From: Camelus dromedarius
Taxonomy: Eukaryota
Direction of reading: 5' to 3'
NCBI RefSeq assembly: GCF_036321535.1
Contig: NC_087444.1
Span: 46,748,146-46,812,000, forward strand
DNA: 63,855 nt
Below are positions 5,701 to 59,329 of this stretch, one piece after another. Under the pieces are notes generated by a model. It was not told the origin of the DNA. It saw only the letters and a list, made by a program, of their open reading frames with translations, and made no database searches. The first letter of the stretch is position 1; the number at the start of each line of letters is the position of its first letter. The position numbers and the translations under genes are program-made.

Positions 5701-6807
5701 TCACAGTACCTTAAAAAAGAAGAAGAAGAAAAAAACCCCAACAAAACAAAAAACCAGGTCCCATTCTCTCAGTCACATAGCCAGGCATAATGGTCTTCGG
5801 GGCCCTTGGGACAAAGGCTAGAACTTGTGTGAACGCACAAAACACGCCCCAAAATACACAGGGAGAAATCCCCAGCTCAGGGAAGGCCCACCTTACTTAC
5901 CATGCAGAGTTGTCACCCTGAGCCGGGCCGCCCCTCTTTGTGTTTGCTTCACTCAAACTCGCCCGCAGATTTCTCCATGCAGGCTGTACTTTCTTAACAC
6001 ATCCTCTCTGACTTTTCTGCCACAGCCTGTTTCCAGGGCAGCTGCTGGAAGATGCTGTGCTTCACACGGCTCCCTATTCTCAGAGGCCCCCTCANNNNNN
6101 NNNNNNNNNNNNNNNNNNNNNNNNNNNNNNNNNNNNNNNNNNNNNNNNNNNNNNNNNNNNNNNNNNNNNNNNNNNNNNNNNNNNNNNNNNNNNNNNNNNN
6201 NNNNNNNNNNNNNNNNNNNNNNNNNNNNNNNNNNGCGGAAATGTAAAGCTTCTACTTCGTGTGAGGAAACAGAAAAGAAGTGTGTTTATTATCCCAATAA
6301 GATAACCTGCTCATTTCTTTAAGAGGCAATTTTTAAGAGGACGTTCGTTCACAGCGAAATCTCACTTGAGCAGATTAGATGAAAAATAACCAGCGCAAAC
6401 ACAATGCCTATTTCAGCCAAGGGCTTTTGCGAAGCGGGAATCACCCAGAGAGACATGCATGGGTCTGCTGGGAGGCATGGCCACGGATTACTTCCGTCCT
6501 GCTCCTCCCGGAGTCCCCTGAACCGAGCCCAGAGTTAGTTATAGAGTTATCTCTCTCAGACTTTGCAGATGATGCCTTACATCATGACAACAGAGAAGAG
6601 GCAAGGTCTCTGGACCTGCCTGCCTACAACAAGTTTCTGTAAAGTAATGAATACAGACAGCTTGGGGACCGTCCACCTGTGCAGCCTGCCTCTTCCCGCC
6701 TGCAAAGTGAAACCACCAGGGACTGGCAGAAGGTACTTGTCTGACAGGGCCAGGGCAGCCTTCCTCCTCCATGACAGCCTGGGCCTCCCCTCTTAAACTT
6801 GACCCAC

Positions 6808-7059
6808 CGTAATTCCTTCACANNNNNNNNNNNNNNNNNNNNNNNNNNNNNNNNNNNNNNNNNNNNNNNNNNNNNNNNNNNNNNNNNNNNNNNNNNNNNN
6901 NNNNNNNNNNNNNNNNNNNNNNNNNNNNNNNNNNNNNNNNNNNNNNNNNNNNNNNNNNNNNNNNNNNNNNNNNNNNNNNNNNNNNNNNNNNNNNNNNNNN
7001 NNNNNNNNNNNNNNNNNNNNNNNNNNNNNNNNNNNNNNNNNNNNNNNNNNATGGTGAAA
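6808..7059 (-). other. Candidate internal exon, 252 nt, core hidden by N-run
   Basis: Minus acceptor ctcgctttctttccag|TTTCACCAT lies 9 nt from N-run 6823-7050; donor TTACG|gtgggt lies 15 nt beyond it. Length is divisible by 3. Confidence 0.4.
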
Positions 7060-8554
7060 CTGGAAAGAAAGCGAGCTCATGGTATCATTACGGCACATGC
7101 TGCCTTAGCAAAGCCTATGCTTTCCAGGGGTTAATTACAATCACCTTCCAGGGCCCCTGTTCTGGTGGGGAGGAGGCCCGAGCTGGCCAGTGGGGTGGAG
7201 ATTTTGCTGGCAAGGCCACGGGGCACCTGGAGGGATGCAGAGGCTGCCGGCAGGCTGGGAAGAGAGGCCGGATATACCGAGAGCGGGCCGAGCATCTGGC
7301 AGGGTGTTTCCCGGAGCTCAGACCCAGCCCTCCACAAGCCTGCCTGGTAGACACGACTTCATTTTCTTCTCTGTAAAATGCATCTTTTCAGTGAAGACAA
7401 AGATAAGGATGAAAGGAAGGGAGTCAGAACCTCTAGAACGCCTTTCCAGGACTGACTGACTCAGAATACAACAGAACTGAAGCGTTTCCACTTAACATGG
7501 GCATCTCCTTGTGAAAAATTAAGATGGCCCACTAAACCTGAGGTTTCTTAAACTACAAAGTAGCACTCTGTCCAGTGGAGAGGATGGAGAGAAAGCTAAT
7601 CAGAAAAGGCCTGTCAGCCACTCCCCTCTTGGAAAGAAACACTAAACTCTTCCTTTCCTGTGTGGATACCAACAGCCTGATCAATACGCACCAAACACGG
7701 AATATTCTAAACATACTGGAATTGTTCAAATAATTTCAACACACAATGTGAAGGTGACTGACCTATTTTTGTTGTTTGATTTGTTTTGTTTTGTTTTTGT
7801 CCTGGGACAAGAGACTGAAAATCATTCCGATAAATGACGCAACAGTGTCCCCTACAGGCCAACGGAGCTATACTTTACCCCACCCCCACCCCCCCATTAC
7901 TTCCTCAACTGAAAGCCAGAGTCAAACTTTTATCTATAACCTGGAATATACATTACAGAGTAAATTTGTAAAATACACTAGGGACACCCCTGAGATAAAA
8001 TAAAATTACTGCTCTTCATGTGCGGTAAATTGTTTCCCAGATATAAACATACTGTACAGCGGTGATTAACCCATTACAGAGAAGATAAATGCTACCTGTT
8101 TGCCCTAAGGGAAGCTACTCAAATCAGCCTTGACTAACCCAGCTCCGAAATTACTCCACTTAGAGGATTTACAGATTCTTGGAGGCTAAACTTTGATGTT
8201 CTCATCTGTGCCCCGACTCTCTCACCTTCTAGAAGATTGTAACCAGCATAAAAGAGATGACATAGCTATAAAGGTAATAACTTTTTCCTTTAAAAGACTT
8301 ACGGGAGGGAGATGTATAAAGGATGAGCTGGAAACCACTCCCTCACAGAGACACAGAGGCACCCACAACTAAGAAGTGGGAAACGTCTTTAGGTACCAGA
8401 GGAAACAAACATTTACAGATACACGCCCACCCATCTCCACTCTGGGAAGGATCCTGGAAGGCCTCTAACCCCCACACTGTGAGACCCAGGTCAAGCACTA
8501 CGTGAACAGCTGAGTGGATGACAAAGAGGAAAGCCTTGTACCTGCTCCAGCTGC

Positions 8555-8735
8555 ATCCACACAGCGGTGGCCCGAGCTGCGCTGTCTTGGCTTAAATTCC
8601 ATCTCCACTACTTAGCGGTGCTGCCTTGGGCAACGACTCTCCATCTCTATGCCTCCCTTTTCTCACCTCCTAAAGTGTTTAAAGCTGTCCGGCAGTTAGC
8701 GAGTTCTCAGTAAATGGTAGCGGCTAGTATTGCTA
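8555..8735 (+). mobile_element. MIR SINE
   Basis: ccttgggcaacgactctccatctctatgcctccc...ctcacct...; tail ttctcagtaaatggtagc. Confidence 0.6.
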
Positions 8736-9199
8736 AACTCAGGACAACTGCAGGCTGATTTCAAGGCTGGTGGAGGTAGAAAGTGAAGCCACAGGAGTAA
8801 CACCTGCCCTTCCGTTAGTTGCTCCCTGGGCTCTAGCCTTGTCAGAGCTGGAAGATGCCTTCGAGGTCACCGGAAGAAGCCACCTCTTCTGTAGACGAAG
8901 TTGCTGAGCTCTGGTGTCTGTGACTTGCTTAAGAGTCCACAGCCAGCTGGAGACAGGATTCAAACTGGAGTTCAGGCCTCCGCCTGTCAGTTCTATGTGG
9001 CAGTCCTTACCTCGTGCAGGGCCTGACATGGGATGAGCTCTGTCCAGTGTGCCTCCCCACACCAACTCAGCAACGTTGGGCCCCCATCGGGAGGCTAGGA
9101 TTGTACCTGGAGGCACCCTCCCAAAGGAGAGGCCAGGCTGGGTGAATTTGGCTGGGACTGTTCTTCCTTTTTTGGTTTTGATCTGAAGGTGAGGGGTAA

Positions 9200-9435
9200 T
9201 TTTTATTGAACACCTAGCATGTGTCTCTAGGTGTTCTACGTGGGATCCCTTGGTCCGCCCCATGAAACAGCTTCTCTTATTACCCCCTCAGGCAAGTTAC
9301 AAATGAGAAAATGGAGGTTCAGAGGGGTTGAGTAACTTGGGTTAATTATAACTCGTCTGGAATCATAGAAGTGGATCCAAGATTTAAACCCAGGCAATCT
9401 GACTCAGAATCCATGCTCCCAGCCTCTATACCATG
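9200..9435 (-). mobile_element. MIR SINE
   Basis: ttattgaacacctagcatgtg ... acaaatgagaaaatggaggttcagaggggttgagtaacttg ... gatttaaacccaggcaatctgactc. Confidence 0.8.
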
Positions 9436-9789
9436 TTCATAAAATGTTCTTTGAAAGAAACCATTTCCCCCACCATTCACCACTGAGAGCTTGGTCTCTC
9501 TGGAGAGAAGGCAGCCCAGGTTTTATTCTGTGACCCATAATCACATATAGAGTTCTCTCCTATTTCTCGCTCATACCTGGAGACAAACAGCTCTCAGCCA
9601 CTTGCACCGACACAATTTCACAACAGAGCAGCGCTCCTCACGACAGCCTGGCATATAACGAGTCACACACAGACACTTCTGGAGAGCCTGTCCCTTTCAT
9701 CCCTGGGACAAGGGTTTCCCCAGGATCCTGACTTCACCTCCTTCACAGCATTCTTACCCCATACTGTATACTGCACTTCCCCCAAGCAG

Positions 9790-9872
9790 TGTTGCTCATC
9801 TCTATAACCTCAGGGCCGACGGTAGTGCCTGGGATCAGGGAGGCACTCGACAAATATTTGCTGAATCAATAC
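9790..9872 (+). mobile_element. L2 3' end
   Basis: gtagtgcctggg...ggcactcgacaaatatttgctgaatcaat. Confidence 0.65.
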
Positions 9873-10439
9873 ATAACTGACAGCTCACTCCCAGTAACCA
9901 TAACCACCACTTATTAAGCGCTGGAGCGCATTACCCATGTCATCCCCCCAGCGCCTATGAGACATGCACAACTTCTCCTGTTCTCTCTGAAGAGATACCT
10001 GTGAATGTAACATGGCCTGAATTTAAGCCTTCCTTAAAGGGAAGACCTTTAAGGTGACGCATCGTTCGTTTTAAAGTCACTGGGAACCAGGGTGCAGACG
10101 ATCAAAGGAGAAAGGAATGCGATGGCCTCCCTCGGATGGAGATCCTCAGAACACTGATATTCCATGAACAGCTCACCAGTCTGACTCACTAGAACGAGAG
10201 CTGCAAGTTTTATAACAAGTGATTATTTTACGATGAAGATCGGAAGAGAAAATTTTGTCCTTATCTCAAACAGAATGACGATATTTTGGCTCTGCTGAGA
10301 GTCACTGAATACGTAGGGTGTGACCACTACATACATTTTTGAAAAGACATGTTCAGAGTTGCACTTAGGAAGACATTTTTTAGCTGTCATTGCCCTTAGG
10401 ATATACGCTCCATGAGAGAAGAGTTCCCATCAGTTCACA

Positions 10440-10528
10440 TCCCTGCTGTGTTTCCAGTACCCTGGAACAGCACTTGAAGAATAGCTGGTACTTAATAAGT
10501 ATTTGCTGCATAAATAAATAAATGAATC
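10440..10528 (+). mobile_element. L2 3' end
   Basis: tgtttccagtacctggaacagcac...gtacttaataagtatttgctgcataaataaataaatgaat. Confidence 0.65.
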
Positions 10529-11314
10529 CATGTTTTCTCAAAAAGTGGAAGAAGCCCTGCCTCTAAGAAGCAGCCAGCAACCAGTCACGGTCAGAAGGCA
10601 GCCAGGAGCGGGGCTCATCCTGAAGCCTATGTGTTGATTTTATAAATAAGATGCGCGGAAGTCAATTGGCTTCTGTCCCCCGTAAAACTGTTCCAAGCAA
10701 GACAGTAACAATGGTAATAACGTTAACCACACTTGCCTCCTTAAGACAAGTTGCTGTATCTTGGAGAAAAGGTAGCCCTATCTCTAGACTCATTTAATCC
10801 TTGCTCTAAATTTATACAATGTTTCAATTCCTACACATTTATGAGGAGGTTTTATGGAGTTATCGGGTTTTATGGAGTAATCTGGTTCAGAGACACAAAG
10901 GACATTCTTCTGCTAACGGCGGCAGAAAGCAGAAACTGCAATTATTAAAAGAGATGGGACAGATGCTTTAGAAAGAAAGACGCGGATGGCAGCTAGCTGG
11001 CCAGTGCCTCCCTGCCGCTCCCCGGAATTCTCTTCCTTTACTCCTCACATGCACCCCGAACGCTGCACACAAATTCAGCTCATTGCAGGGGACAGTTACT
11101 GAACTGGAGATGCCACAACTTCAAGTTCCCAACTAATTCGGCCAAAAGCAGCAGCCGCTGTCTTGAGCATGGGTGACAGTACCTGGCATGGTCAGGTGAC
11201 TCAGTCACGTGTTATCTCAGAAGAGAACTATACTGTCCTCATCATCCCACAGCCCATCTTCAAGGCTAGGGACGGCGATCTGGGGCTCGGGTTTTACAGT
11301 TGGTGAACAGACAA

Positions 11315-11400
11315 GACAGATCCCCGCCCTCATGAGGTTTACATTCTAGTGAGAGAGACAAAAAATATAAACATAATCAACTACTTATATAGTACATGCT
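11315..11400 (-). mobile_element. L2 fragment
   Basis: ccccgccctcatgaggtttacattctagtgagagagaca. Confidence 0.6.
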
Positions 11401-11539
11401 GGGTTACTTCTTCTCTAAGTTTCCTTGGTGTAGACTCCATTGCGCAGTCATCCTTCTGCGTCCCAGAGTGCCCCACGCGAAGGAGAACAGGAATCTGTCA
11501 CCTGTGTGCCTTTATGAACCTCCCCCGCCCCTCCCCGAC

Positions 11540-11655
11540 ATGAGACTATAAATTATTTCAGAGTCGAGACTGTTTCATATTCATCCTGCCGTTTCCCACG
11601 GTGTCGAGTGCAGTGACTTGTACTTGATAAGCATGTAGTAAATAATAGTTTATAA
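11540..11655 (+). mobile_element. L2 3' fragment
   Basis: gactataaattattt...gagactgtttcatattcatc...tgacttgtacttgataagcatgtagtaaata. Confidence 0.5.
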
Positions 11656-12589
11656 TTGCTAAACTGGACTGGGCCAACCTGTTAGCTTTGAGTAGAACCT
11701 GGCCTGCCATCAGGCAAGAGGAGAGACCAGACCACCATGGAGAAAACCGTAACGTGCCAGTCTTAAAACCGGAGTCCGTCCACACAAGCGAGTCACGCCA
11801 GCTGGCTTACTTGTGGCACCCAGATTAGAGTTCTGAAGCTGACTGGCTTAGAAAGGGAAGTCCTACCCATGATAAGATCTAGGTTATAACCACTGGATTG
11901 TGGACCCCCAACAAAGGTGTCCAAAGTGGATCCCTCCTGGAAGTACGTGGTGATGGGGGGTGCTGCGGAGGACAGGAGGACCGTCTATAATAAGACATCC
12001 GGTTGTTTCAGGAGTCTAGAAAAAAATGCTAACTTGGCAGCCTTTTTAGATACCAAACCCAATATGGAGAAGACGAGTATAAAAACATCTAGGTCTGGAG
12101 AGTTACTTTTAACTGGAAGTAAGTAGTTCTAAAAGCTTTTCTAAAGAACATGCCATAAGCATTTTAAAAAACTGTTCTCAGTAACCATTTTAAGGCTCCG
12201 TGGACCCAAATGAAGTTGTCTGCGATGGGGCTATCGTAAGTCCTGTTTGAGCCTAGAAGCTGAGGGGCTTAGGAGAACAGAGTTTCCATTTACTTAGGCT
12301 ACAGTCCTATCCAGCGTGCAATGTTCAGAGATTCTGTAATGACAGACATGTAAGAGGATGGTAGAGGGAAGCGGGAGGCGACCTAGAGAAACAAGTAAAT
12401 ACGCATGTGGGCCACATGCGGTAAAGAAAGGGCCGTGGTAAGTGGGAACCGGGCACAGCTGCGTACTTGTGACAGCCTCGTTTGGAACTCTATCCATCCA
12501 ATAAGCCAAATACCCCTAACAGGCTTGTGACCTCTTTACCACTTAGGGGTAAGTCGTTAAGTCTGCCATGTTTTAAAATCTCCTAATAA

Positions 12590-13395
12590 AAAACTAATGG
12601 TCTTCAATAAGCCCATGGAAAGATGCTCAACATCATTAGTCATCGGGGACATGTAGATCAAAACCACAATGAGATAACACTGGGATGTCTCGAATCCAAA
12701 AAGAGGACAAGAACAAGTGCTGGCAAGACGGTGGAAAAAATCGAAACCTCTGTGTGCCACTGCTGGGAATGCAAAACGGCACAGGAGTTGGGGAAAAGGG
12801 CCAGGCAGCTCCTCAAAAAGTTAAACATCAAGTTACCATTGTGACTCAACAATTCCATGCCTAGGTTTTTACTCAAAGGGACTGAAGACATGTCACTCAA
12901 AAACTTGCACATGAATGTACACAGTAGCCTTATGCGTGAGAGCCAGAAAGTCAACCCAAGCATCTCTCAGCTGATGAATGGATAAACAAAATGTGGTACA
13001 GCCACAAAATAGGATTAGTTTTTGGCAACCAAAAGGAACGAAGAACTGATACAGGCTACAACATGGATGAACCTTGAAATCATTATGCTAAATGAAAGAA
13101 GCCAGACACAAAAGTCCTGTATGATTCCATTTCTATGAAATGTTCAGAAGAGGCAAGTCTATAGAAACAGAAAGTAGGTTAGACAGACAGTTGTCAAGGA
13201 CTGTGGGGAGAAGGGGAAATTGGGAGTGGGTGTTCACAGGTTCAGGCTGCTGTCTGGGGTGATGGAAATGCTCTGGAATTGGGTAATGGTCACAGCCGCA
13301 CCATCTTGTGACTATACTTTAAAAAAAAATCACTGAACTGTACACTTTCAAATGACTAATTTTATGTTACATGAATTATACCTCGGTTTAAAAAA
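12590..13395 (+). mobile_element. Old L1 3' end (L1MB-like)
   Basis: atggaaagatgctcaacatcattagtcatc...atcaaaaccacaatgagata ... gctacaacatggatgaaccttgaaatcattatgctaaatgaaagaagccagacacaaaag ... atgaattatacctc. Confidence 0.9.
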
Positions 13396-15199
13396 TCCTT
13401 TGGCCTGGCTTTCGTCTGATTGTTTGTAGTTGCACCTTACTTAGCAAAAATTTAAAGGGAGAGCTTTAAAGTTAAAAAGCATAGTTAACGCTTAAAGCGT
13501 TCCTCAAACCCCTGAGTTATACTTCACCTGGCTTTCTGCTCGCTGTAAATCCCCTTGGACATATACAGTCAAGACAACAACTATACTCACTTTAGGTAAT
13601 GTTCAGAAGGGCTGTAATTCTATTTTAAACATAAGTACTGTCTGGGTGAGGCTTCTCTTCTGTAGGCAATGTAGTTCAATACCAGGGGTTTTCAATAGTA
13701 CAGCAATTCTAGACCTCGAAACATCGACAATTAAATACTTTCCTGGGAGGGCCAGAGCAGCGGGCCTCTCTGTTGTGGTAACGATGGCTCCACCACTCAC
13801 TTCCCTTTCCACTGCCTTCCACAGCCTCTTTCTAGGAACCTGCTAAATTCTCATCCCCAGATCAATTCTTAAATTGGCTCCCGAGCACATTTTATCTCGT
13901 GTACAGCACCTCACACCGTACTTGGTTTACAGCAGGCATACAAAATACACAAAAATGCTTCATGAATAAAATCCTTCTCTTTTCCGAATGCAGACACATG
14001 GGATGTGCCGTCAGCAGTCTCTGCAGAAGAGTGTGGGACTCTGTGAACGCCAATGTCACTGGCCAGAAACCGGGACACTCTGTCCACAGGAAGCTGGGAG
14101 AAAGCTTTAAACAGATCACTCTTAGCAATTAATGAGTGCAGAGCTTGTGACCTACCTACTGTTGGCACTGATTAGCATCACCAAGATGTTTCTTTGAAAA
14201 TGGAATAAACAAAGGAACACATATATCTACTCAATTAACAAGAAAAGTGCTGTCTTATTTTTACAGAAAAACTGCCAAGTAGCAGTGAAATGGTGTGCAA
14301 GAGTCACGTGTATATTTAGTATCAAAAAAAAGCACAATGTTCAGCGGCCAGATGGTGAAATGGATCACAATTTTTTTGCGAAGCACTTTCTCTAACATGT
14401 GATTCAGCTACATTCTCTAGACTAAGCATGCAGGCAGGAAAAAAATAATTTGCTTCCCATTCTGACATGTTCGGGGCAAAGGAAGCCCACTGCTTTCCTT
14501 AAGCTGACTACAAATAATTATTCCATGACAAACACGCCCTCAAAATTTTCTGCAACCGAGGAAAGCCACTAGGGATTTGTGTAAAATAAACAAAGGCCCT
14601 GAGTTTTACTATTTTTTTAATTTAGAAAAACAACTCGGGCCTGGACCTCAGACTGTACCTTTTCTTTAGTGCACTTTTCAAATGATAATTTCTTCCACTG
14701 TCACCATTAAATCTTAATCCATTCCAGCTCCTTGCATGGGTCATTGAGTCTATATGTTCGGGCTGTTATTTTAAAATGTTTCCCCTTGGTAGGGAAAGGG
14801 GGGGAGAAAAGATGTTGAGGGCCAGATGGGCCTCTTCACAGTTCATTTATCAAACCTAATACACTGGGCTCTACCCTCCTCTCACTCACGACTGCGGTTA
14901 AACTTCCATATAATTTGGTAATCATTTTCATTATCAGAGAGTGACCCGAAAGCAGCCTATCCTGGGACACCCAGCCCTCTGCAGCTGCTCTTTTTCTGCC
15001 TTTCCCTACAGTAGGCCCTAAGAACCTTCGAGTTTATTAGCTGCAGACTGACCTTTGGGCCGCAGAGGTCGAGCAGGGGTCAGATCAGAGGGCTTGCCCA
15101 GTTCTTTAAAAGCTATAACAAGCTGTCCATCAGGCAGAGTGGACTGTATAAACAAAGCCAAATCTTCAGAAATTCTGTACCACTTCTGTTAACACTTAC

Positions 15200-15425
15200 C
15201 CTGCATTCACACGGCTTCTCCCGATGTACTTTGGNNNNNNNNNNNNNNNNNNNNNNNNNNNNNNNNNNNNNNNNNNNNNNNNNNNNNNNNNNNNNNNNNN
15301 NNNNNNNNNNNNNNNNNNNNNNNNNNNNNNNNNNNNNNNNNNNNNNNNNNNNNNNNNNNNNNNNNNNNNNNNNNNNNNNNNNNNNNNNNNNNNNNNNNNN
15401 NNNNNNTGACACTTTCCTCCAAAAG
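15200..15425 (-). other. Candidate internal exon, 226 nt, core hidden by N-run
   Basis: Minus acceptor ttccctgtaatttag|CTTTTGGAGG and donor GCAGG|gtaagt bracket N-run 15235-15406. Visible open readings: xFGGKC...PKYIGRSRVNAG or FWRKVS...KVHREKPCECR. Confidence 0.45.
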
Positions 15426-17060: not shown

Positions 17061-19699
17061 AGAATGGATAGTTCATACTCTTAATTGTCTCCTTTCTTGG
17101 AAAATGCTCATCTTCAGCCTTGTTCAGAAAAATCTATTTTTATGATAATTGTTACTAGTAAAGCCATCAATTATTGTAAATCCTGTTGCATGAACTCATT
17201 TGGAGAATATTATGGCTATCAATAAATGTTCTTGACTCCCAGGCACACAGAATTTTTAAGTATCAAATGAGACTCTGACACAAAATCTAGCATAATTTTC
17301 CTGATTCCTCTCCCTCTTGCTTAGAGACAGATGGTAATTCAACAACACAAATTACACATCTAAAGCCTCCAACCCATTGACTGTTTTTCAAAGAAGAGCA
17401 GGATAACACGTTATTTAGCATGCAAGCATCAATTCAGTAAAACTGATGATTTGTGGAAACTTTCTGCCAGTAACAGCCTTCTAACCACAGGTAAGTCCAT
17501 GTGCAAAGAAACTAGGTTGAAGCCAAAGTCATTTCTACTTGGTCAATTCTAAAAATGGGCTTGATGAAGAGTCTACCTGCAAGCGATCTGCCTCCCAAGG
17601 GATGTAGGAGCACTATGTGGATTTCCCAGACATCTGCCCTGACTCAACAGCAATGCTGCTCTTTTAGACTGTTGATTAAAAGGGTTCTTCAGCATCAGGG
17701 ACTTATATTACATTATGCTCAAGACGCAAACATTTATGCTAAATGTTACACTCAGGGATAAATCACATACGCATACAGATGACATCATGCATCACGACAG
17801 AATGTAGGTACCGTGTGCCGCAAACCTAACTTCGGCTGAAAGCATCTGTAACTTGCTTCTTTTCCATGGCGCCTCACACGAGAGGGATGAGACCAGCCCT
17901 CAGGAAGGGCTTTAGCCAAAGAAAGCTCTTATTTTCCAGGGACCACACATCCCGTTCTGTAACGAACTAACCTGGCGTGCCATTCCCTCCTCAGGTTCTG
18001 GCGGGTGGTGAGCACAGCGAGAATGGCGGTCAAGATTTTGTTCCTTTGTTCCACTGGGGCCCCCTCTCTTCTAACTTCATGAAGCACAGCATTTGTCTAG
18101 AAGAAATGATGCCCAAAAAGAGAAAGAAGAAGTGAAAAATTAATAATGAAAAAAAAAAAGCCCATAAGCAAATAAGGACAGTAAATCAATGGCTTTTTTA
18201 TTATAGTTCCCCTGCTAACAAATCAATACAGTAAATGATGGTCAAAAATGGCCAGCATATATTTTGTATTTAATCAATGTACATGGCACATAAGGGAAAC
18301 TCTAAAGCTCCATTGCCTTGAGTAACACATCAAGATACTGCGCATTCTCGCTCTAATTTTCTCAGTGCACAGACTTTTTTTTTTTCTCCCTGGGAACTGC
18401 CTACCATGAGCTATTAATAGAAATGATTTTCACGTCCACTTCACTATGAGTTGTTTGTTTGGCCTTTTAAAACAGAGCAGTCCCTGGCTTTCCCTCTGTC
18501 TGTTTCCCGCCGCCCAGCTGAGGCTTACTACACTGCCTCTTCTTATTTGAATCATTAATTTCTACTTCCAGCCATGCCGGGCATTTTTCTTTTTCTTCGT
18601 CTTTTTTTTTTTTTTTTTTTGCTTTTGCTTCCCTCATTTTCCTTGCTTGTTGCAAATCAAAAGCTTGCAAAGAAAGGAACATTAAGAGCACAAAAATCAA
18701 ATAGTATATCTCCATGAGTATCTTTCCAGCTTTGAAGATCCACTACATATTTCAAATAATAGGTCCAAGGATTCTAATGCACAGCAGACTGAGGGTTTGG
18801 GGGAAGAATCGTTTATCCTATGGTTATGGCTATAGTCTTAAAAAAAAAAAAAAAACTACAACAACACCCAGGCTTCTCCCTAGCATTTGGGAAGGTCACA
18901 CGCTGCTTTTCAGAAGCAGTTGAAACGCAAGCACGTCAAACCCTGCTCTCTCTAACAAGTAGCATTACATCATAGCTCAAATTTGAAACTGTCATTTCAA
19001 CTTTATCTACCACCACTCACCCCTGTAGGCTCTTTTTATATGTATTTTAAACATGCCAATTTATGTAACACTAGAAAAACAATTAAGAAAACAATGGAAG
19101 GTATTCTACTGGTTGAAATTTGAGGGAGCAGATGCCTTTCAAGTTTTAATCACAGAACCTTTCATCACAAGTATTTATCTTCCTACAACTGCAGCAGAAA
19201 CCTCTAGGATTTGTAAATGTTTTTCATTTAAAGTTAGCGGGGCTTCTTTGGAGATGTTATAACCAAAACAATTGCTAAAAGGGATAAAATTGCCACTTTC
19301 TCTGTTCTGATCACTCAGAGTCTTTCTCATTTAACTGATGTCAATACCTGCGTTTACTTGAGGAGCACACTCAAAATTTGATTCTCATTTATCCTGAACT
19401 ACTACTTATTTGCCCCCTATAACATTTTACAGTGCATGTTTAATATCTTCACGACACCCCGAGAAGAAGCGTGGTGACCATTTGCTGTTCTTGTTGCCTT
19501 CCATACATACCCAGTCCCCCTTTCCTGTAATAGCACCCAGATCTCCTGCTGGGAAGTCTTTTATTGTATGTGAGCTTATAGAAGCTGTCAACCAAAGTGT
19601 TCTGCTCGCCCCTATCAACAATGTAGGCCAACTTGATCCTCTTTTCGAGGACACTTAAGAATGACAAAGAAAGGGAAAAAATGTGGAGGCAACTAATCT

Positions 19700-27075: not shown

Positions 27076-27662
27076 GCAGCATTATGTGTTTTAAAAATCA
27101 GGAAAAAAGATCACAGAAGATAATGGATACTGATTTTTTTTAATCCTAAAATACCACAGTCATGAATTTGAATAATTACTTAATATTTTTCCCAAAGCAC
27201 TTTCACAGTAGTTCCCATTTTTTCCTCCTCCTACTAGTATAGAAATCACTCTATTTTATTTGTTTCACTAAAAGCTACAGAACCACAGCAGCCTGCCTGG
27301 GATCACATAACTCTCAGGACAGTTGTGTGGGTGACCGCTGGGATGCCCGGGCTGCTGGGGGACAAGAAAGCCTGTCCCAGTTGTGGAACCTGGGGTCTTG
27401 GGGCAGTGAGTCAAAGCCAGACCTCAGAACCCAGGTGGCAACTTTTGTGGAAACACAAAGTGATCCATGTGTTTNNNNNNNNNNNNNNNNNNNNNNNNNN
27501 NNNNNNNNNNNNNNNNNNNNNNNNNNNNNNNNNNNNNNNNNNNNNNNNNNNNNNNNNNNNNNNNNNNNNNNNNNNNNNNNNNNNNNNNNNNNNNNNNNNN
27601 NNNNNNNNNNNNNNNNNNNNNNNNNNNNNNNNNNNNNNNNNNNNNNNNNNNNNNNNNNNNNN

Positions 27663-27919: not shown

Positions 27920-28338
27920 NNNNNNNNNNNNNNNNNNNNNNNNNNNNNNNNNNNNNNNNNNNNNNNNNNNNNNNNNNNNNNNNNNNNNNNNNNNNNNNNN
28001 NNNNNNNNNNNNNNNNNNNNNNNNNNNNNNNNNNNNNNNNNNNNNNNNNNNNNNNNNNNNNNNNNNNNNNNNNNNNNNNNNNNNNNNNNNNNNNNNNNNN
28101 NNNNNNNNNNNNNNNNNNNNNNNNNNNNNNNNNNNNNNNNNNNNNNNNNNNNNNNNNNNNNNNNNNNNNNNNNNNNNNNNNNNNNNNNNNNNNNNNNNNN
28201 NNNNNNNNNNNNNNNNNNNNNNNNNNNNNNNNNNNNNNNNNNNNNNNNNNNNNNNNNNNNNNNNNNNNNNNNNNNNNNNNNNNAACGGGCTTCTTATGAT
28301 AGGAAATGGGATTTGATTTCTAGCCTCTGCATACTTAC

Positions 28339-44085: not shown

Positions 44086-44502
44086 ACCACTCCTCACTAA
44101 TCATATCTGAAAAAAGTCAAAAAGTCTATTAATGAACTGCACTGGTGAGGATGCGGAGAAAGCAGGCACTGCCTCACATAAACGCTACGTGTGAATCCAT
44201 ATACGTGTACATAAATACACACACACATATAAACTCTGCCACAGACTCTATCTCTGGAAGGCAATTTGACCATTTCTCTTAAAATTAAAGATGCACATAG
44301 TCTTTGATCCAACAGTTCTACTCCTAGGTATCACCACAAATATTATATGTGAAANNNNNNNNNNNNNNNNNNNNNNNNNNNNNNNNNNNNNNNNNNNNNN
44401 NNNNNNNNNNNNNNNNNNNNNNNNNNNNNNNNNNNNNNNNNNNNNNNNNNNNNNNNNNNNNNNNNNNNNNNNNNNNNNNNNNNNNNNNNNNNNNNNNNNN
44501 NN

Positions 44503-49434: not shown

Positions 49435-50880
49435 TGAATTCATTTCTTTAACAAGTGTCGAAGGCCTGATACGTATCAGGCACTGTTCTAGGAGCTGGGG
49501 CAGTAAGAGTGAGTAAAACAAAGCCTCTGTCCCCATGAGGATTATATAAGTAGAGGCCGACTGGAAACACACATGGTATCATGGCAGATGGGGGAAAGCA
49601 GCAGCGGGCAAAGTACAGCAGAGAGAGCTTGGTCAGAGAAATGCTCTCCAAAGAGGGACAGGAGCAGAGAGACCTGAAGGATCTCAGATCTCAGTGAGCG
49701 AGCGAGTGAGCCACGCAAATAACAGAGGGAAGAATATGGCAGACACAGGCAACAGTAAATGCAAAGGTCCTGGGGCAGGAGGAAGTCGGGCTCATTCTAA
49801 GGGCAGTAAGGANNNNNNNNNNNNNNNNNNNNNNNNNNNNNNNNNNNNNNNNNNNNNNNNNNNNNNNNNNNNNNNNNNNNNNNNNNNNNNNNNNNNNNNN
49901 NNNNNNNNNNNNNNNNNNNNNNNNNNNNNNNNNNNNNNNNNNATTCTAAGTCAAGTAAGCGAGAAAGAGAAAGAAAAATACCACATGATAACACTTATAT
50001 GTGGAATCCCCCCCAGAAGACACAAATGAACTCACTTACAAAACAGAAACAGACTCACAGACATAGAAAACAAACTTAACGGTTACAGGGTGTAGGGGAA
50101 AGGGGTGGGGAGGTATAAATTGGGAGCTCAGGATTTGCAGATACTAACTACTATATATAAGATAGATAAACCACAAGTCTACCGTATAGCACAGGGAACC
50201 ATATTCAGTATCTTGTAGTAACCTATAATGAAAAAGAATATGAAAATGAATATACATATGTCTATGTATGACTGAAACATGAGGCTGTACATCAGAAATT
50301 GACACATTGTAAAGTGACTAGACGTCAATAAAAATAAATAAATAAATAAAAACACTTAAAAAAAAGAATATATAAGGAACAACAACAAAAAAAAATACAG
50401 TTAGAAGGCTAGTGGAGAAGGGGGCAGGGTGGGGGAGACTGTGTTGAGGGGAGGGGGACGCACAAGAGCCCTCGCAAGGAAGCTGAGGTCCTGAACAGGA
50501 TGGAGAGTTTGGGCTAGGGGAGAGAAATAACCTGCCATATTTTAAAGGGGCACTGACAGGGGTGAACATGAGTGGTAGAAGCAGGGAGGTTGTTTCCACT
50601 CGCGGCCATGGCCCTTGGACCAAGGTGGGAGCAGAGAGGGTGGGGGAGGGTGGTCAGATCATGAACCTATTTTGAAAACAGAGCTAACTAGATTCACTGG
50701 TAAGTCCAGAGGCAAAGTAAGAGAACTCCAAGGTTTTGGGTTTGGGCAATGGGAGGGTGCAAATTATTGAACTGTGCAAGACTGGGAGAAAGGCTGGAGG
50801 GAATTGTGGGAATCAAAAGTTTGGTTCGGGATACTTATTACTAGATGGTTGATGAAGGCACACTACTGTTCAGGTGCCCT
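49435..50880 (-). mobile_element. L2 split by a young L1 (pieces ~49435-49812 and ~50395-50880)
   Basis: caggcactgttctaggagctgggg; aacagtaaatgcaaaggtcctggggcagg; ggtggtcagatcatgaacctattttgaa; gaactccaaggttttgggtttggg. Confidence 0.75.
49943..50395 (+). mobile_element. Young camelid L1 3' end (5' part under N-run)
   Basis: ILSQVSEKEKEKYHMITLICGI, then 3'UTR gtatagcacagggaaccatattcagtatcttgtagtaacctataatg ... A-rich tail. Confidence 0.93.
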
Positions 50881-58310: not shown

Positions 58311-59329
58311 TTCTCATCTTCACTTCCTTAGCGTATGTGTAACACAGCGCCTTACATGTAGGAAATGCTCCATACGTGCTCATTGCACTGCACTGAGCTC
58401 GTACTGAAAAAACCCTGGCTGCTCCCATTACCTTACCAAGAGTAACTTAACTCACTATTTAGAATAATTAAATATGCATTACCTATGCAAACAAGGCAGC
58501 CGAGGATTAGTAGAGCACAGCATCCCAGAAAATCCGGTCCCAGACCTGTGGTACTTACCACACCTTCCATCTTCTTCCACAGCTCCTCCAGCTGAGTCAT
58601 GGGTTGACACCACCAATTGGTGCACTTTTTGTATCGATTGCCTTGAAACCAAAACTGTCTCAGCCACTCAAATTCGACCTGGGGATCATAAAGACAAGGC
58701 CGTGGTTAGGATGCCCCTGGGATGGACAATCAAGGACAATAAACTTCGTCACTCCATTCTCCAGTAACTTCACAAGCCACAGGGTGAGAAAAGGTGAGAA
58801 AAGCTCAGCTTAACCAGTTCCCAATATAGCTTGGGGTCTCCAGAGCCTTTCTGCAAAGTCAAGAAGGAGAGCAGTCTTAAAGCTTAGTGAGACAACCCAG
58901 GTCAGGCTGTGGATTTTCAGTCACATATCGTCACTCAGACGTGAGGAAACTATAAGTCAATCAACAACAAATCCTGAGACCCTCAAGTATACAGCAGCCT
59001 ATACTGTGTGTGATGGGAAAGACAGAATCTAACAAGATGTGTTTTCATTGAACATCTGTATTAAAGACTATTATTAAGAGCAAAACACAGATACATATCA
59101 GAAAATATCAATTTTAGGTTTCTTAGATCAAAAATAAATATAGAATTTACCCATGAGCCAAGAGGAGCTGGCAGTACTATCAACTCATATAATTAAACAA
59201 TATAAGGCTAATTATGGAGGAACACATTGAACCTCCAGAGCCATTCAGATTGTCACTTTCAATCCAGTCAGAGCCAACAACAATAGGTAAATAGGACATA
59301 AAGACACTAATCACTTCTTTTCCTTCCTA

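What the first reader, a model, noticed from the sequence alone, without database searches (positions are those of the whole stretch)
6808..15425. Two N-masked blocks bracketed by phase-compatible minus-strand splice sites: probable hidden consecutive exons
Seen: block 15235-15406 has an acceptor 19 nt outside one edge and a GG|gtaagt donor 35 nt outside the other (226 nt). Block 6823-7050 has a strong acceptor 9 nt out and a CG|gtgggt donor 15 nt out (252 nt). Splicing them keeps two visible frames open across the junction: ...PKYIGRSRVNAG|FT(I/M)...VKELR, or ...KVHREKPCECR|FHH...CEGIT. Inference: these are real, highly conserved exons of the host gene. I do not recognise either peptide, so they may belong to a known gene I cannot name, to unannotated or UTR exons, or to conserved poison exons.
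Basis: partly seen in the sequence, partly recalled or inferred. Interest (0 to 1): 0.7.

Follow-up and report, generated by a model that had tools for sequence, protein, structure and literature searches.

The report
Masked conserved blocks in FTO intron
The two masked stretches lie in the last intron of the camel FTO gene and are not among its nine coding exons; they are either conserved regulatory DNA or unannotated alternative exons, and this could not be settled here.

Summary
On the minus strand, block 15235-15406 sits inside an AG...GT interval of 226 nt (15425-15200). Block 6823-7050 sits inside one of 252 nt (7059-6808). All four flanks are single copy.

The host gene is FTO, on the minus strand. 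Its exons 2-9 all map elsewhere. Exons 7 (58678-58546) and 8 (18096-17972) are in the window and are not masked. Exon 9 lies about 133 kb below the window start. Both blocks therefore lie 2.5 kb and 10.9 kb into the ~151-kb last intron. The reading "consecutive exons of the host gene's coding sequence" is refuted.

Against 200,000 random intervals, B's splice pair is unusual (P about 0.003 per strand; 0.06 expected among the 22 block-strands). A's pair is not (0.46 expected). A third block, 6095-6234, has an equally exon-like pair on the opposite strand.

None of about 400 fetched FTO proteins uses A or B. Their alternative tails map elsewhere in intron 8.

FTO is a known bystander gene in the IRX3/IRX5 regulatory block, which is dense in conserved non-coding elements.

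My odds: about 50% conserved non-coding elements, about 38% real alternative or non-coding exons. Interest is low.

The parts
15235..15406 (.). Masked block A (172 N), unique sequence in FTO intron 8
15200..15425 (-). Candidate exon A, 226 nt. Weak acceptor (PWM 3.7) and strong donor CAGG|gtaagt (10.1). Lies 2.5 kb downstream of FTO exon 8.
   Evidence: pair score about 14, P=0.02 per strand
6823..7050 (.). Masked block B (228 N), unique sequence in FTO intron 8
6808..7059 (-). Candidate exon B, 252 nt (84 x 3). Strong acceptor ctttctttccag| (9.8) and donor ACG|gtgggt (8.5). Lies 10.9 kb downstream of FTO exon 8.
   Evidence: pair score 18.2, P=0.003 per strand
17972..18096 (-). FTO exon 8 (125 nt, TNAVLHEV...RREWHA + AG), not masked. 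Its donor CCAG|gttagt opens intron 8, which holds both blocks.
58546..58678 (-). FTO exon 7, not masked
   Evidence: boundaries set by tblastn plus the best nearby splice sites, approximate to a few bases

Best explanation
The two masked blocks are strongly conserved, single-copy non-coding elements in the ~151-kb last intron (intron 8) of FTO. They belong to the cluster of such elements that fills the IRX3/IRX5 regulatory landscape. They most likely act as long-range cis-regulatory DNA (enhancer or architectural sites) for IRX3/IRX5. They are not part of the FTO coding sequence. On this reading the AG...GT motifs at their edges are chance, or allow at most occasional exonisation.

Shown here: the gene identity, the intron position, the absence of both blocks from the known FTO exons and from predicted isoforms, and the statistics of the splice motifs. 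Inferred: that the masks mean high similarity to human DNA, and that the blocks have a regulatory function.
For: FTO identity: a 250-aa open frame 94 kb upstream hits solved FTO structures at 4e-130 and Pfam FTO_NTD at 7e-84.

All exons are accounted for. Whale FTO maps exons 2-8 on the minus strand. Exon 9, with its acceptor, lies at window coordinate about -133165.

FTO exons 7 and 8 are in the window and unmasked. Nine locally unique blocks of 130-364 nt are masked within 64 kb. The masked stretches are therefore apparently more human-like than the gene's own coding exons. Conservation above that of exons, and clustering, are the usual properties of conserved non-coding elements (PMC5728398).

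The 264 kb examined has no CpG island.

Most masked blocks have no splice-like flanks. One block (6095-6234) has a good pair on the opposite strand, so such flanks do not reliably mark FTO exons here.

No protein among about 400 FTO orthologues and isoforms carries the visible edge peptides or an insertion between exons 8 and 9.

Literature: genes such as FTO are bystanders that carry conserved non-coding elements for a neighbouring target gene in their introns, and IRX3 is such a target (PMC5728398). Human FTO intron 8 holds elements that contact and regulate IRX3 (PMC10393733; bioRxiv 10.1101/2024.02.06.579027).
Against: B's acceptor-donor pair is rare by chance (0.06 expected among 22 block-strands) and lies on the FTO strand.

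The masked part nearly fills the interval between the splice motifs, ending 9 and 15 nt inside them. Conservation bounded by splice sites is the pattern of an exon.

B's length is a multiple of 3 and would keep FTO exon 9 in frame.

Three block-strands score >= 14 against 0.46 expected (Poisson P about 0.01).

Regulatory activity was not tested.
Confidence: 0.5

Rival explanations
1. A and B (or B alone) are real, conserved alternative exons of sense transcripts through FTO intron 8. They could be non-coding or poison exons spliced between FTO exons 8 and 9, or exons of an enhancer-associated spliced lncRNA that runs on to exon 9. Joined to exon 8, A reads S+FWRKVS...KVHREKPCECR and A+B shifts the frame of exon 9. 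The product would lose the last ~50 residues of the C-terminal domain, or the mRNA would be degraded.
For: The splice pairs fall within the range of true FTO exons (A about 14, B 18.2, against 9.2-20.3). B's pair has P=0.003 per strand. Both are on the FTO strand, and the conserved parts are bounded by the motifs. After A or A+B, exon 9 would be read out of frame, with a stop after 24 codons. Many mammals have predicted alternative exons after exon 8. Human AML cells make spliced, polyadenylated sense lncRNAs that start in intron 8 and end in exon 9 (PMC10393733).
Against: About 60 distinct alternative tails after exon 8, from mammals, birds and reptiles, were examined. None starts like A or B, and none recurs across orders as a conserved exon would. 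Those that map at all map elsewhere in intron 8. A's acceptor is weak. A's pair is expected by chance about once in two such windows. It would be unusual for non-coding alternative exons to be better conserved than the gene's own coding exons 7 and 8.
Confidence: 0.38
2. B alone is a conserved, frame-preserving 84-codon cassette exon of FTO. It would insert S-F-T-(I/M)...V-K-E-L between exon 8 and the Arg that opens exon 9.
For: 252 = 84 x 3. Exon 8 ends with 2 nt (AG) and exon 9 supplies 1 nt (G), so exon 8 to B to exon 9 keeps the frame. The frame FT(I/M)...VKEL(R) is open in the visible edges.
Against: No FTO protein of about 589 aa, and none with an insertion at this junction, appears among 104 cluster representatives covering exons 7-8 or among 64 sampled cluster members. 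Annotation pipelines readily report in-frame cassettes. Only 8 codons are visible. A non-coding 76-codon interior would stay open with probability about 0.03.
Confidence: 0.04
3. The blocks are canonical coding exons of the host gene, hidden by the mask.
For: Only the splice-like flanks. At first I matched the visible ...EKPCECR to the FTO motif KPECR.
Against: KPECR lies inside exon 9, far downstream. Exons 2-9 all map elsewhere, with proper splice sites. Exon 8's donor and exon 9's acceptor fit each other in phase.
Confidence: 0.01
4. The N runs are true assembly gaps of unknown length, so the exon lengths and phases mean nothing.
For: The scan program's generic warning.
Against: There are eleven runs of eleven different lengths (130-364 nt) in 64 kb, but none in 200 kb of flanking sequence fetched from the same chromosome.
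Confidence: 0.02

Closest known systems
Conserved non-coding elements of the IRX3/IRX5 (IrxB) genomic regulatory block inside the bystander gene FTO
   Same: Location in an FTO intron. Clustering of unique blocks a few hundred bases long. Apparent conservation above that of the host gene's own exons. No CpG island and no coding evidence.
   Different: Published functional work concerns intron 1 and more distal parts of intron 8 in human and mouse. These two camel blocks lie 2.5 and 10.9 kb after exon 8 and carry exon-like AG...GT flanks on the FTO strand. Their regulatory activity is untested.
Conserved poison or alternative cassette exons (as in SR-protein genes)
   Same: A conserved core bounded by an acceptor and a donor. 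Inclusion of A or A+B would shift the reading frame of the last exon.
   Different: No spliced RNA, no annotated isoform and no visible stop codon. Conservation does not visibly extend into the flanking introns as it does for ultraconserved poison exons. FTO is not known to be regulated in this way.
FTO-lncAML / FTO-207, sense spliced enhancer lncRNAs from human FTO intron 8 (PMC10393733)
   Same: Sense-strand exons arising inside intron 8 from regulatory elements and splicing on towards exon 9. A, with a weak acceptor and strong donor, would fit a first exon.
   Different: By my own estimate from the ~220 kb distance to IRX3 given in the paper, the human elements lie far nearer exon 9, so they are not the orthologues of these blocks. 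Expression in camel is unknown.
Predicted alternative last exons after FTO exon 8 in other mammals
   Same: Same intron and same strand, joined to the exon 8 donor. One of them is conserved in this window at 17118-17073.
   Different: Those exons are unmasked and short, end in a stop codon, and differ between lineages. None coincides with A or B.

Membership tests
Canonical FTO coding exon | Encodes a segment of the FTO protein that aligns to orthologues | tested here: not met
   tblastn of whale and banteng FTO places residues 15-455 on other exons. Residues 457-505 map to exon 9 at C9:46614830-46614980. The visible edge peptides are absent from 403 FTO proteins.
Alternative / poison exon | AG acceptor and GT donor of usable strength on the gene's strand | tested here: met
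   A: 3.7 / 10.1. B: 9.8 / 8.5. True FTO exons: acceptors 4.9-10.2, donors 4.0-12.0.
Alternative / poison exon | Spliced reads or transcripts across its junctions | not testable with these tools
The exon interiors are masked. A search for short protein fragments containing exon 8 found nothing.
Alternative / poison exon | Presence in annotated or predicted isoforms of any species | tested here: not met
   No tail or insertion matching A or B in the isoforms (scripts). Caveat: non-coding and decay-targeted isoforms are not in protein databases.
Alternative / poison exon | Premature stop or frameshift on inclusion | tested here: inconclusive
   A (226 nt) and A+B (478 nt) shift exon 9 out of frame, with a stop after 24 codons in the last exon. 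B alone keeps the frame. Stops inside the masked interiors cannot be seen.
Conserved non-coding element of a genomic regulatory block | Conservation equal to or above that of neighbouring coding exons | tested here: inconclusive
   Indirect only. The blocks are masked, which the operators' notes describe as done on purpose and which other notes tie to human-likeness, while FTO exons 7 and 8 are not masked. Identity to other species was not measured, by instruction.
Conserved non-coding element of a genomic regulatory block | Clustered, single-copy, inside or beside a developmental regulator's landscape | tested here: met
   Nine locally unique masked blocks in 64 kb. The flanks of A and B are unique genome-wide. 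The locus is FTO intron 8, next to IRX3 (PMC5728398, PMC10393733).
Conserved non-coding element of a genomic regulatory block | Enhancer or architectural activity | not testable with these tools
   This needs chromatin data or reporter assays.

The most novel reading that the evidence does not exclude
Block B, perhaps together with A, is a deeply conserved and so far unannotated alternative exon of FTO between exons 8 and 9. It would be better conserved than the gene's own coding exons. It would either insert 84 residues into, or (with A) cut off, the C-terminal helical domain of this RNA demethylase. That would give FTO a conserved switch at the level of splicing.
Probability: 0.2. Interest if true: 0.5.

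Novelty: already known. Interest (0 to 1): 0.15.

Why it matters
As it stands, little. The work places the window in camel FTO, gives the exon map, and shows that the masked blocks are not hidden coding exons. Conserved elements in FTO introns that serve IRX3/IRX5 are a well-described phenomenon. If B, or A+B, turned out to be spliced, FTO would have a conserved alternative or poison exon in its last intron. That would be of moderate interest for how this much-studied obesity-locus and m6A-demethylase gene is regulated.

Tried and rejected
1. My first guess was that block A is FTO exon 8, because the visible ...EKPCECR resembles the FTO motif KPECR. This was wrong: the motif lies inside exon 9 and the true exon 8 is at 18096-17972.

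2. RNA test. I sent nothing from those places to any tool afterwards.

I located exon 9 with the genome search instead.

4. Isoform hunt. Two homologue searches and one cluster listing gave many alternative tails after exon 8, none matching A or B. A third search with the 41-aa exon 8 peptide, aimed at short transcript fragments, found nothing.

5. Rfam found no family in the window.

6. The bacterial promoter/terminator scan was irrelevant to a mammalian locus.

7. A paper search for FTO isoforms, alternative splicing and exons gave nothing. A search for splice variants and intron 8 gave nothing relevant to these blocks.

8. The scan's earlier findings hold nothing on this locus.

9. Repeat origin is rejected for A and B, because their flanks are single copy. 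Blocks 44355 and 49813 do abut a repeat with 12-13 copies in 264 kb.

10. Recursive-splice site is rejected for B, because no GT follows its acceptor.

Locus L001 was fetched automatically and spans block B. I did not read, print or analyse it. My scripts load every locus file but never used that record. I did not look up the masked letters anywhere.
Full report
**What is there.** The window is G000:C9:46748146-46812000 of a camelid genome. Other notes of this scan call it camel. The window holds 11 runs of N, each 130-364 nt long. On the minus strand, block 15235-15406 is preceded by tccctgtaatttag|CTTTTGGAGGAAAGTGTCA and followed by ...GTGTGAATGCAGG|gtaagt. Block 6823-7050 is preceded by cgctttctttccag|TTTCACCAT and followed by TGTGAAGGAATTACG|gtgggt.

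The 200-nt flanks of both blocks occur once in the genome. Their chromosome coordinates leave exactly 172 and 228 positions between them. The 200 kb of flanking chromosome that I fetched has no N at all. I therefore treat the runs as in-place masks of true length.

**Host gene.** A 250-aa open frame 94 kb upstream on the minus strand (L017:5251-6000) matches solved FTO structures at 4e-130 and Pfam FTO_NTD at 7e-84. I took FTO orthologues from the protein libraries and mapped whale FTO (P0245, 505 aa) onto 264 kb of the locus with local tblastn. The hits, in window coordinates on the minus strand, are:

| Exon | Window coordinates |
|---|---|
| 2 | 120600-120520 |
| 3 | 109855-109229 |
| 4 | 94497-94357 |
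| 5 | 73741-73655 |
| 6 | 66099-65950 |
| 7 | 58681-58547 |
| 8 | 18096-17971 |

These are the raw tblastn limits. After refinement with the nearest splice sites, exon 7 is 58678-58546 and exon 8 is 18096-17972.

Exon 8 reads TNAVLHEV...RREWHA plus two bases AG, and ends at CCAG|gttagt. Exon 9 was found with a whole-genome search. Its acceptor is cttcttactcttccag|G at C9:46614980, about 133 kb below the window start. It reads (R)[25 protein letters not shown]...EAKP. Intron 8 is therefore about 151 kb long. A and B lie 2.5 and 10.9 kb into it.

My first idea was that the visible ...EKPCECR marked the end of FTO exon 8. This was a chance resemblance, because the FTO motif KPECR is inside exon 9. 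The main reading of the first stage, consecutive exons of the host gene hidden by the mask, does not hold for the known gene. Exons 2 to 9 were mapped elsewhere, and exon 1 must lie upstream of exon 2. The two genuine FTO exons inside the window are not masked.

**Are the splice motifs more than chance?** I scored sites with a simple position-weight matrix whose frequencies come from memory, so the scores are rough. A scores acceptor 3.7, donor 10.1. B scores acceptor 9.8, donor 8.5. True FTO exons 2-8 give pair sums of 9.2-20.3 with the same matrix, so both candidates fall within the range of real exons.

As a null, I drew 200,000 random intervals of the same lengths from the 264 kb. For each I took the best acceptor within 40 nt upstream and the best donor within 40 nt downstream. 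The results were:

| Pair sum | P per strand | Expected among 22 block-strands |
|---|---|---|
| >= 18 | 0.003 | 0.06 |
| >= 14 | 0.021 | 0.46 |

B is therefore unusual and A alone is not. Three block-strands reach 14 against 0.46 expected. The third is the plus strand of block 6095-6234: acceptor 9.9 at 11 nt, donor 6.4 at 26 nt, 177 nt in all. Blocks beside a repeat also score above expectation. The flanks of masked blocks may therefore be somewhat richer in such motifs than random DNA.

The open frames across the junction cover only about 25 visible codons and say nothing.

**Reading frames relative to FTO.** Exon 8 ends with two bases of a codon.
- Exon 8 to A gives Ser, then FWRKVS...KVHREKPCECR, ending on a codon boundary.
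- A to B gives FHH...CEGIT, again ending on a boundary.
- Exon 9 would then be read out of frame and stop after 24 codons.
- Exon 8 to B alone gives Ser, FT(I/M)...VKEL, then Arg, and keeps exon 9 in frame, because 252 is 84 x 3.

Whether the masked interiors carry stops cannot be seen.

**Search for use of A or B in known or predicted proteins.** Two homologue searches and one cluster listing brought in 403 proteins, most of them FTO orthologues and isoforms, from mammals, birds, reptiles and amphibians.
- None contains the visible edge peptides in any frame.
- None has an insertion between the exon 8 and exon 9 sequences.
- Longer isoforms differ mostly at the N-terminus.
- About 60 different alternative tails follow exon 8. 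They differ between lineages.
- Where these tails can be placed on the camel sequence, they map to other parts of intron 8, at window 17361-17259, 17120-17076 and 11955-11808, and further downstream at about -13.6, -17.9, -24.6, -48.9, -60.9, -63.1 and -96.6 kb.

Caveat: a tail encoded mainly inside a masked block could not be placed by this mapping, and non-coding or decay-targeted isoforms are not in protein libraries.

A last search with the exon 8 peptide, for short transcript fragments, was blank.

**RNA.** RNA runs of the species exist. They hold about 80% of the words of a mostly intronic stretch, so they contain unspliced RNA or DNA. I sent nothing from those places afterwards. In any case the exon interiors are masked, so junction reads could hardly have been laid. 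There is therefore no RNA evidence either way.

**Context.** The 264 kb has no CpG island. Nine of the eleven masked blocks are unique within the locus. Two abut a repeat with 12-13 copies in 264 kb. The largest masked cluster is 27475-27662 plus 27920-28283.

From the literature: conserved non-coding elements cluster around developmental regulators such as IRX3, often exceed coding exons in conservation, and commonly sit in introns of unresponsive bystander genes (PMC5728398). Human FTO intron 8 contains elements that contact and regulate IRX3. These include a CTCF-bound tether (bioRxiv 10.1101/2024.02.06.579027) and enhancer modules that also give rise to spliced, polyadenylated sense lncRNAs ending in FTO exon 9 (PMC10393733). 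By my estimate those human elements lie much nearer exon 9 than the present blocks.

**Weighing.** I start from a low prior that a strongly conserved intronic block in this landscape is an unannotated exon (a few percent). B's splice pair multiplies the odds by roughly a hundred and A's by roughly thirty. The absence of A and B from all predicted isoforms, and the equally exon-like pair on the opposite strand, lower the odds again. My final figures are:
- about 50%: plain conserved non-coding elements;
- about 38%: at least B is a real alternative, non-coding or poison exon of a sense transcript;
- about 4%: B is an in-frame coding cassette;
- about 1%: canonical coding exons;
- about 2%: true assembly gaps.

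**Verdict.** They are not exons of the known FTO coding sequence, and their use in RNA is unproven. The most likely reading, conserved regulatory DNA in an FTO intron, is an already known kind of thing, so interest is low.

Noticed in passing
window 6084-6260 (+ strand), around N block 6095-6234: This masked block has an exon-like pair on the opposite strand: ccctattctcag|AGGCCCCCTCA[140 N]...CTACTTCGT|gtgagg. The interval is 177 nt (59 x 3), the pair score is 16.3 and P is about 0.007-0.008 per strand. It lies only about 550 nt from candidate exon B and points towards it. It is either an antisense exon or a warning that such flanks arise by chance here.
   Followed up: partly
window 17118-17073 (- strand): An unmasked alternative last exon lies 0.85 kb after FTO exon 8: ttctgaacaag|GCTGAAGATG...GTATGA. 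Joined to exon 8 it gives the tail RLKMSIFQERRQLRV plus a stop. This tail is identical to that of a predicted elephant-seal FTO isoform (P0386). It is a conserved truncating isoform that lacks the last 50 residues.
   Followed up: partly
window 27475-27662 and 27920-28283: This is the largest masked cluster of the window, 552 N within 809 nt. On the minus strand it is preceded by a 70-nt polypyrimidine tract, and a TATA-like ttttataaa sits between the two blocks. It is probably the strongest conserved element of this part of intron 8.
   Followed up: no
window 44355-44502 and 49813-49942: These two masked blocks abut the same interspersed repeat, which looks LINE-like by eye (12-13 copies in 264 kb). 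The masks therefore also cover repeat sequence, not only unique conserved elements.
   Followed up: partly
window 58546-58678 and 17972-18096 (- strand): FTO exons 7 and 8 are fully visible, while intronic blocks are masked. These exons are only 75-83% identical in protein to whale and cattle FTO. This C-terminal part of FTO evolves faster than the intronic elements around it.
   Followed up: yes
FTO intron 8, window about +12 kb to -97 kb (flanks L003-L012): Predicted alternative tails after exon 8 from deer, buffalo, whale, ferret, stoat, kangaroo rat and others map to at least eight different places in the camel intron. This last intron seems to be a frequent source of lineage-specific alternative last exons.
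   Followed up: partly
I did not examine it or send it to any tool afterwards.
   Followed up: no
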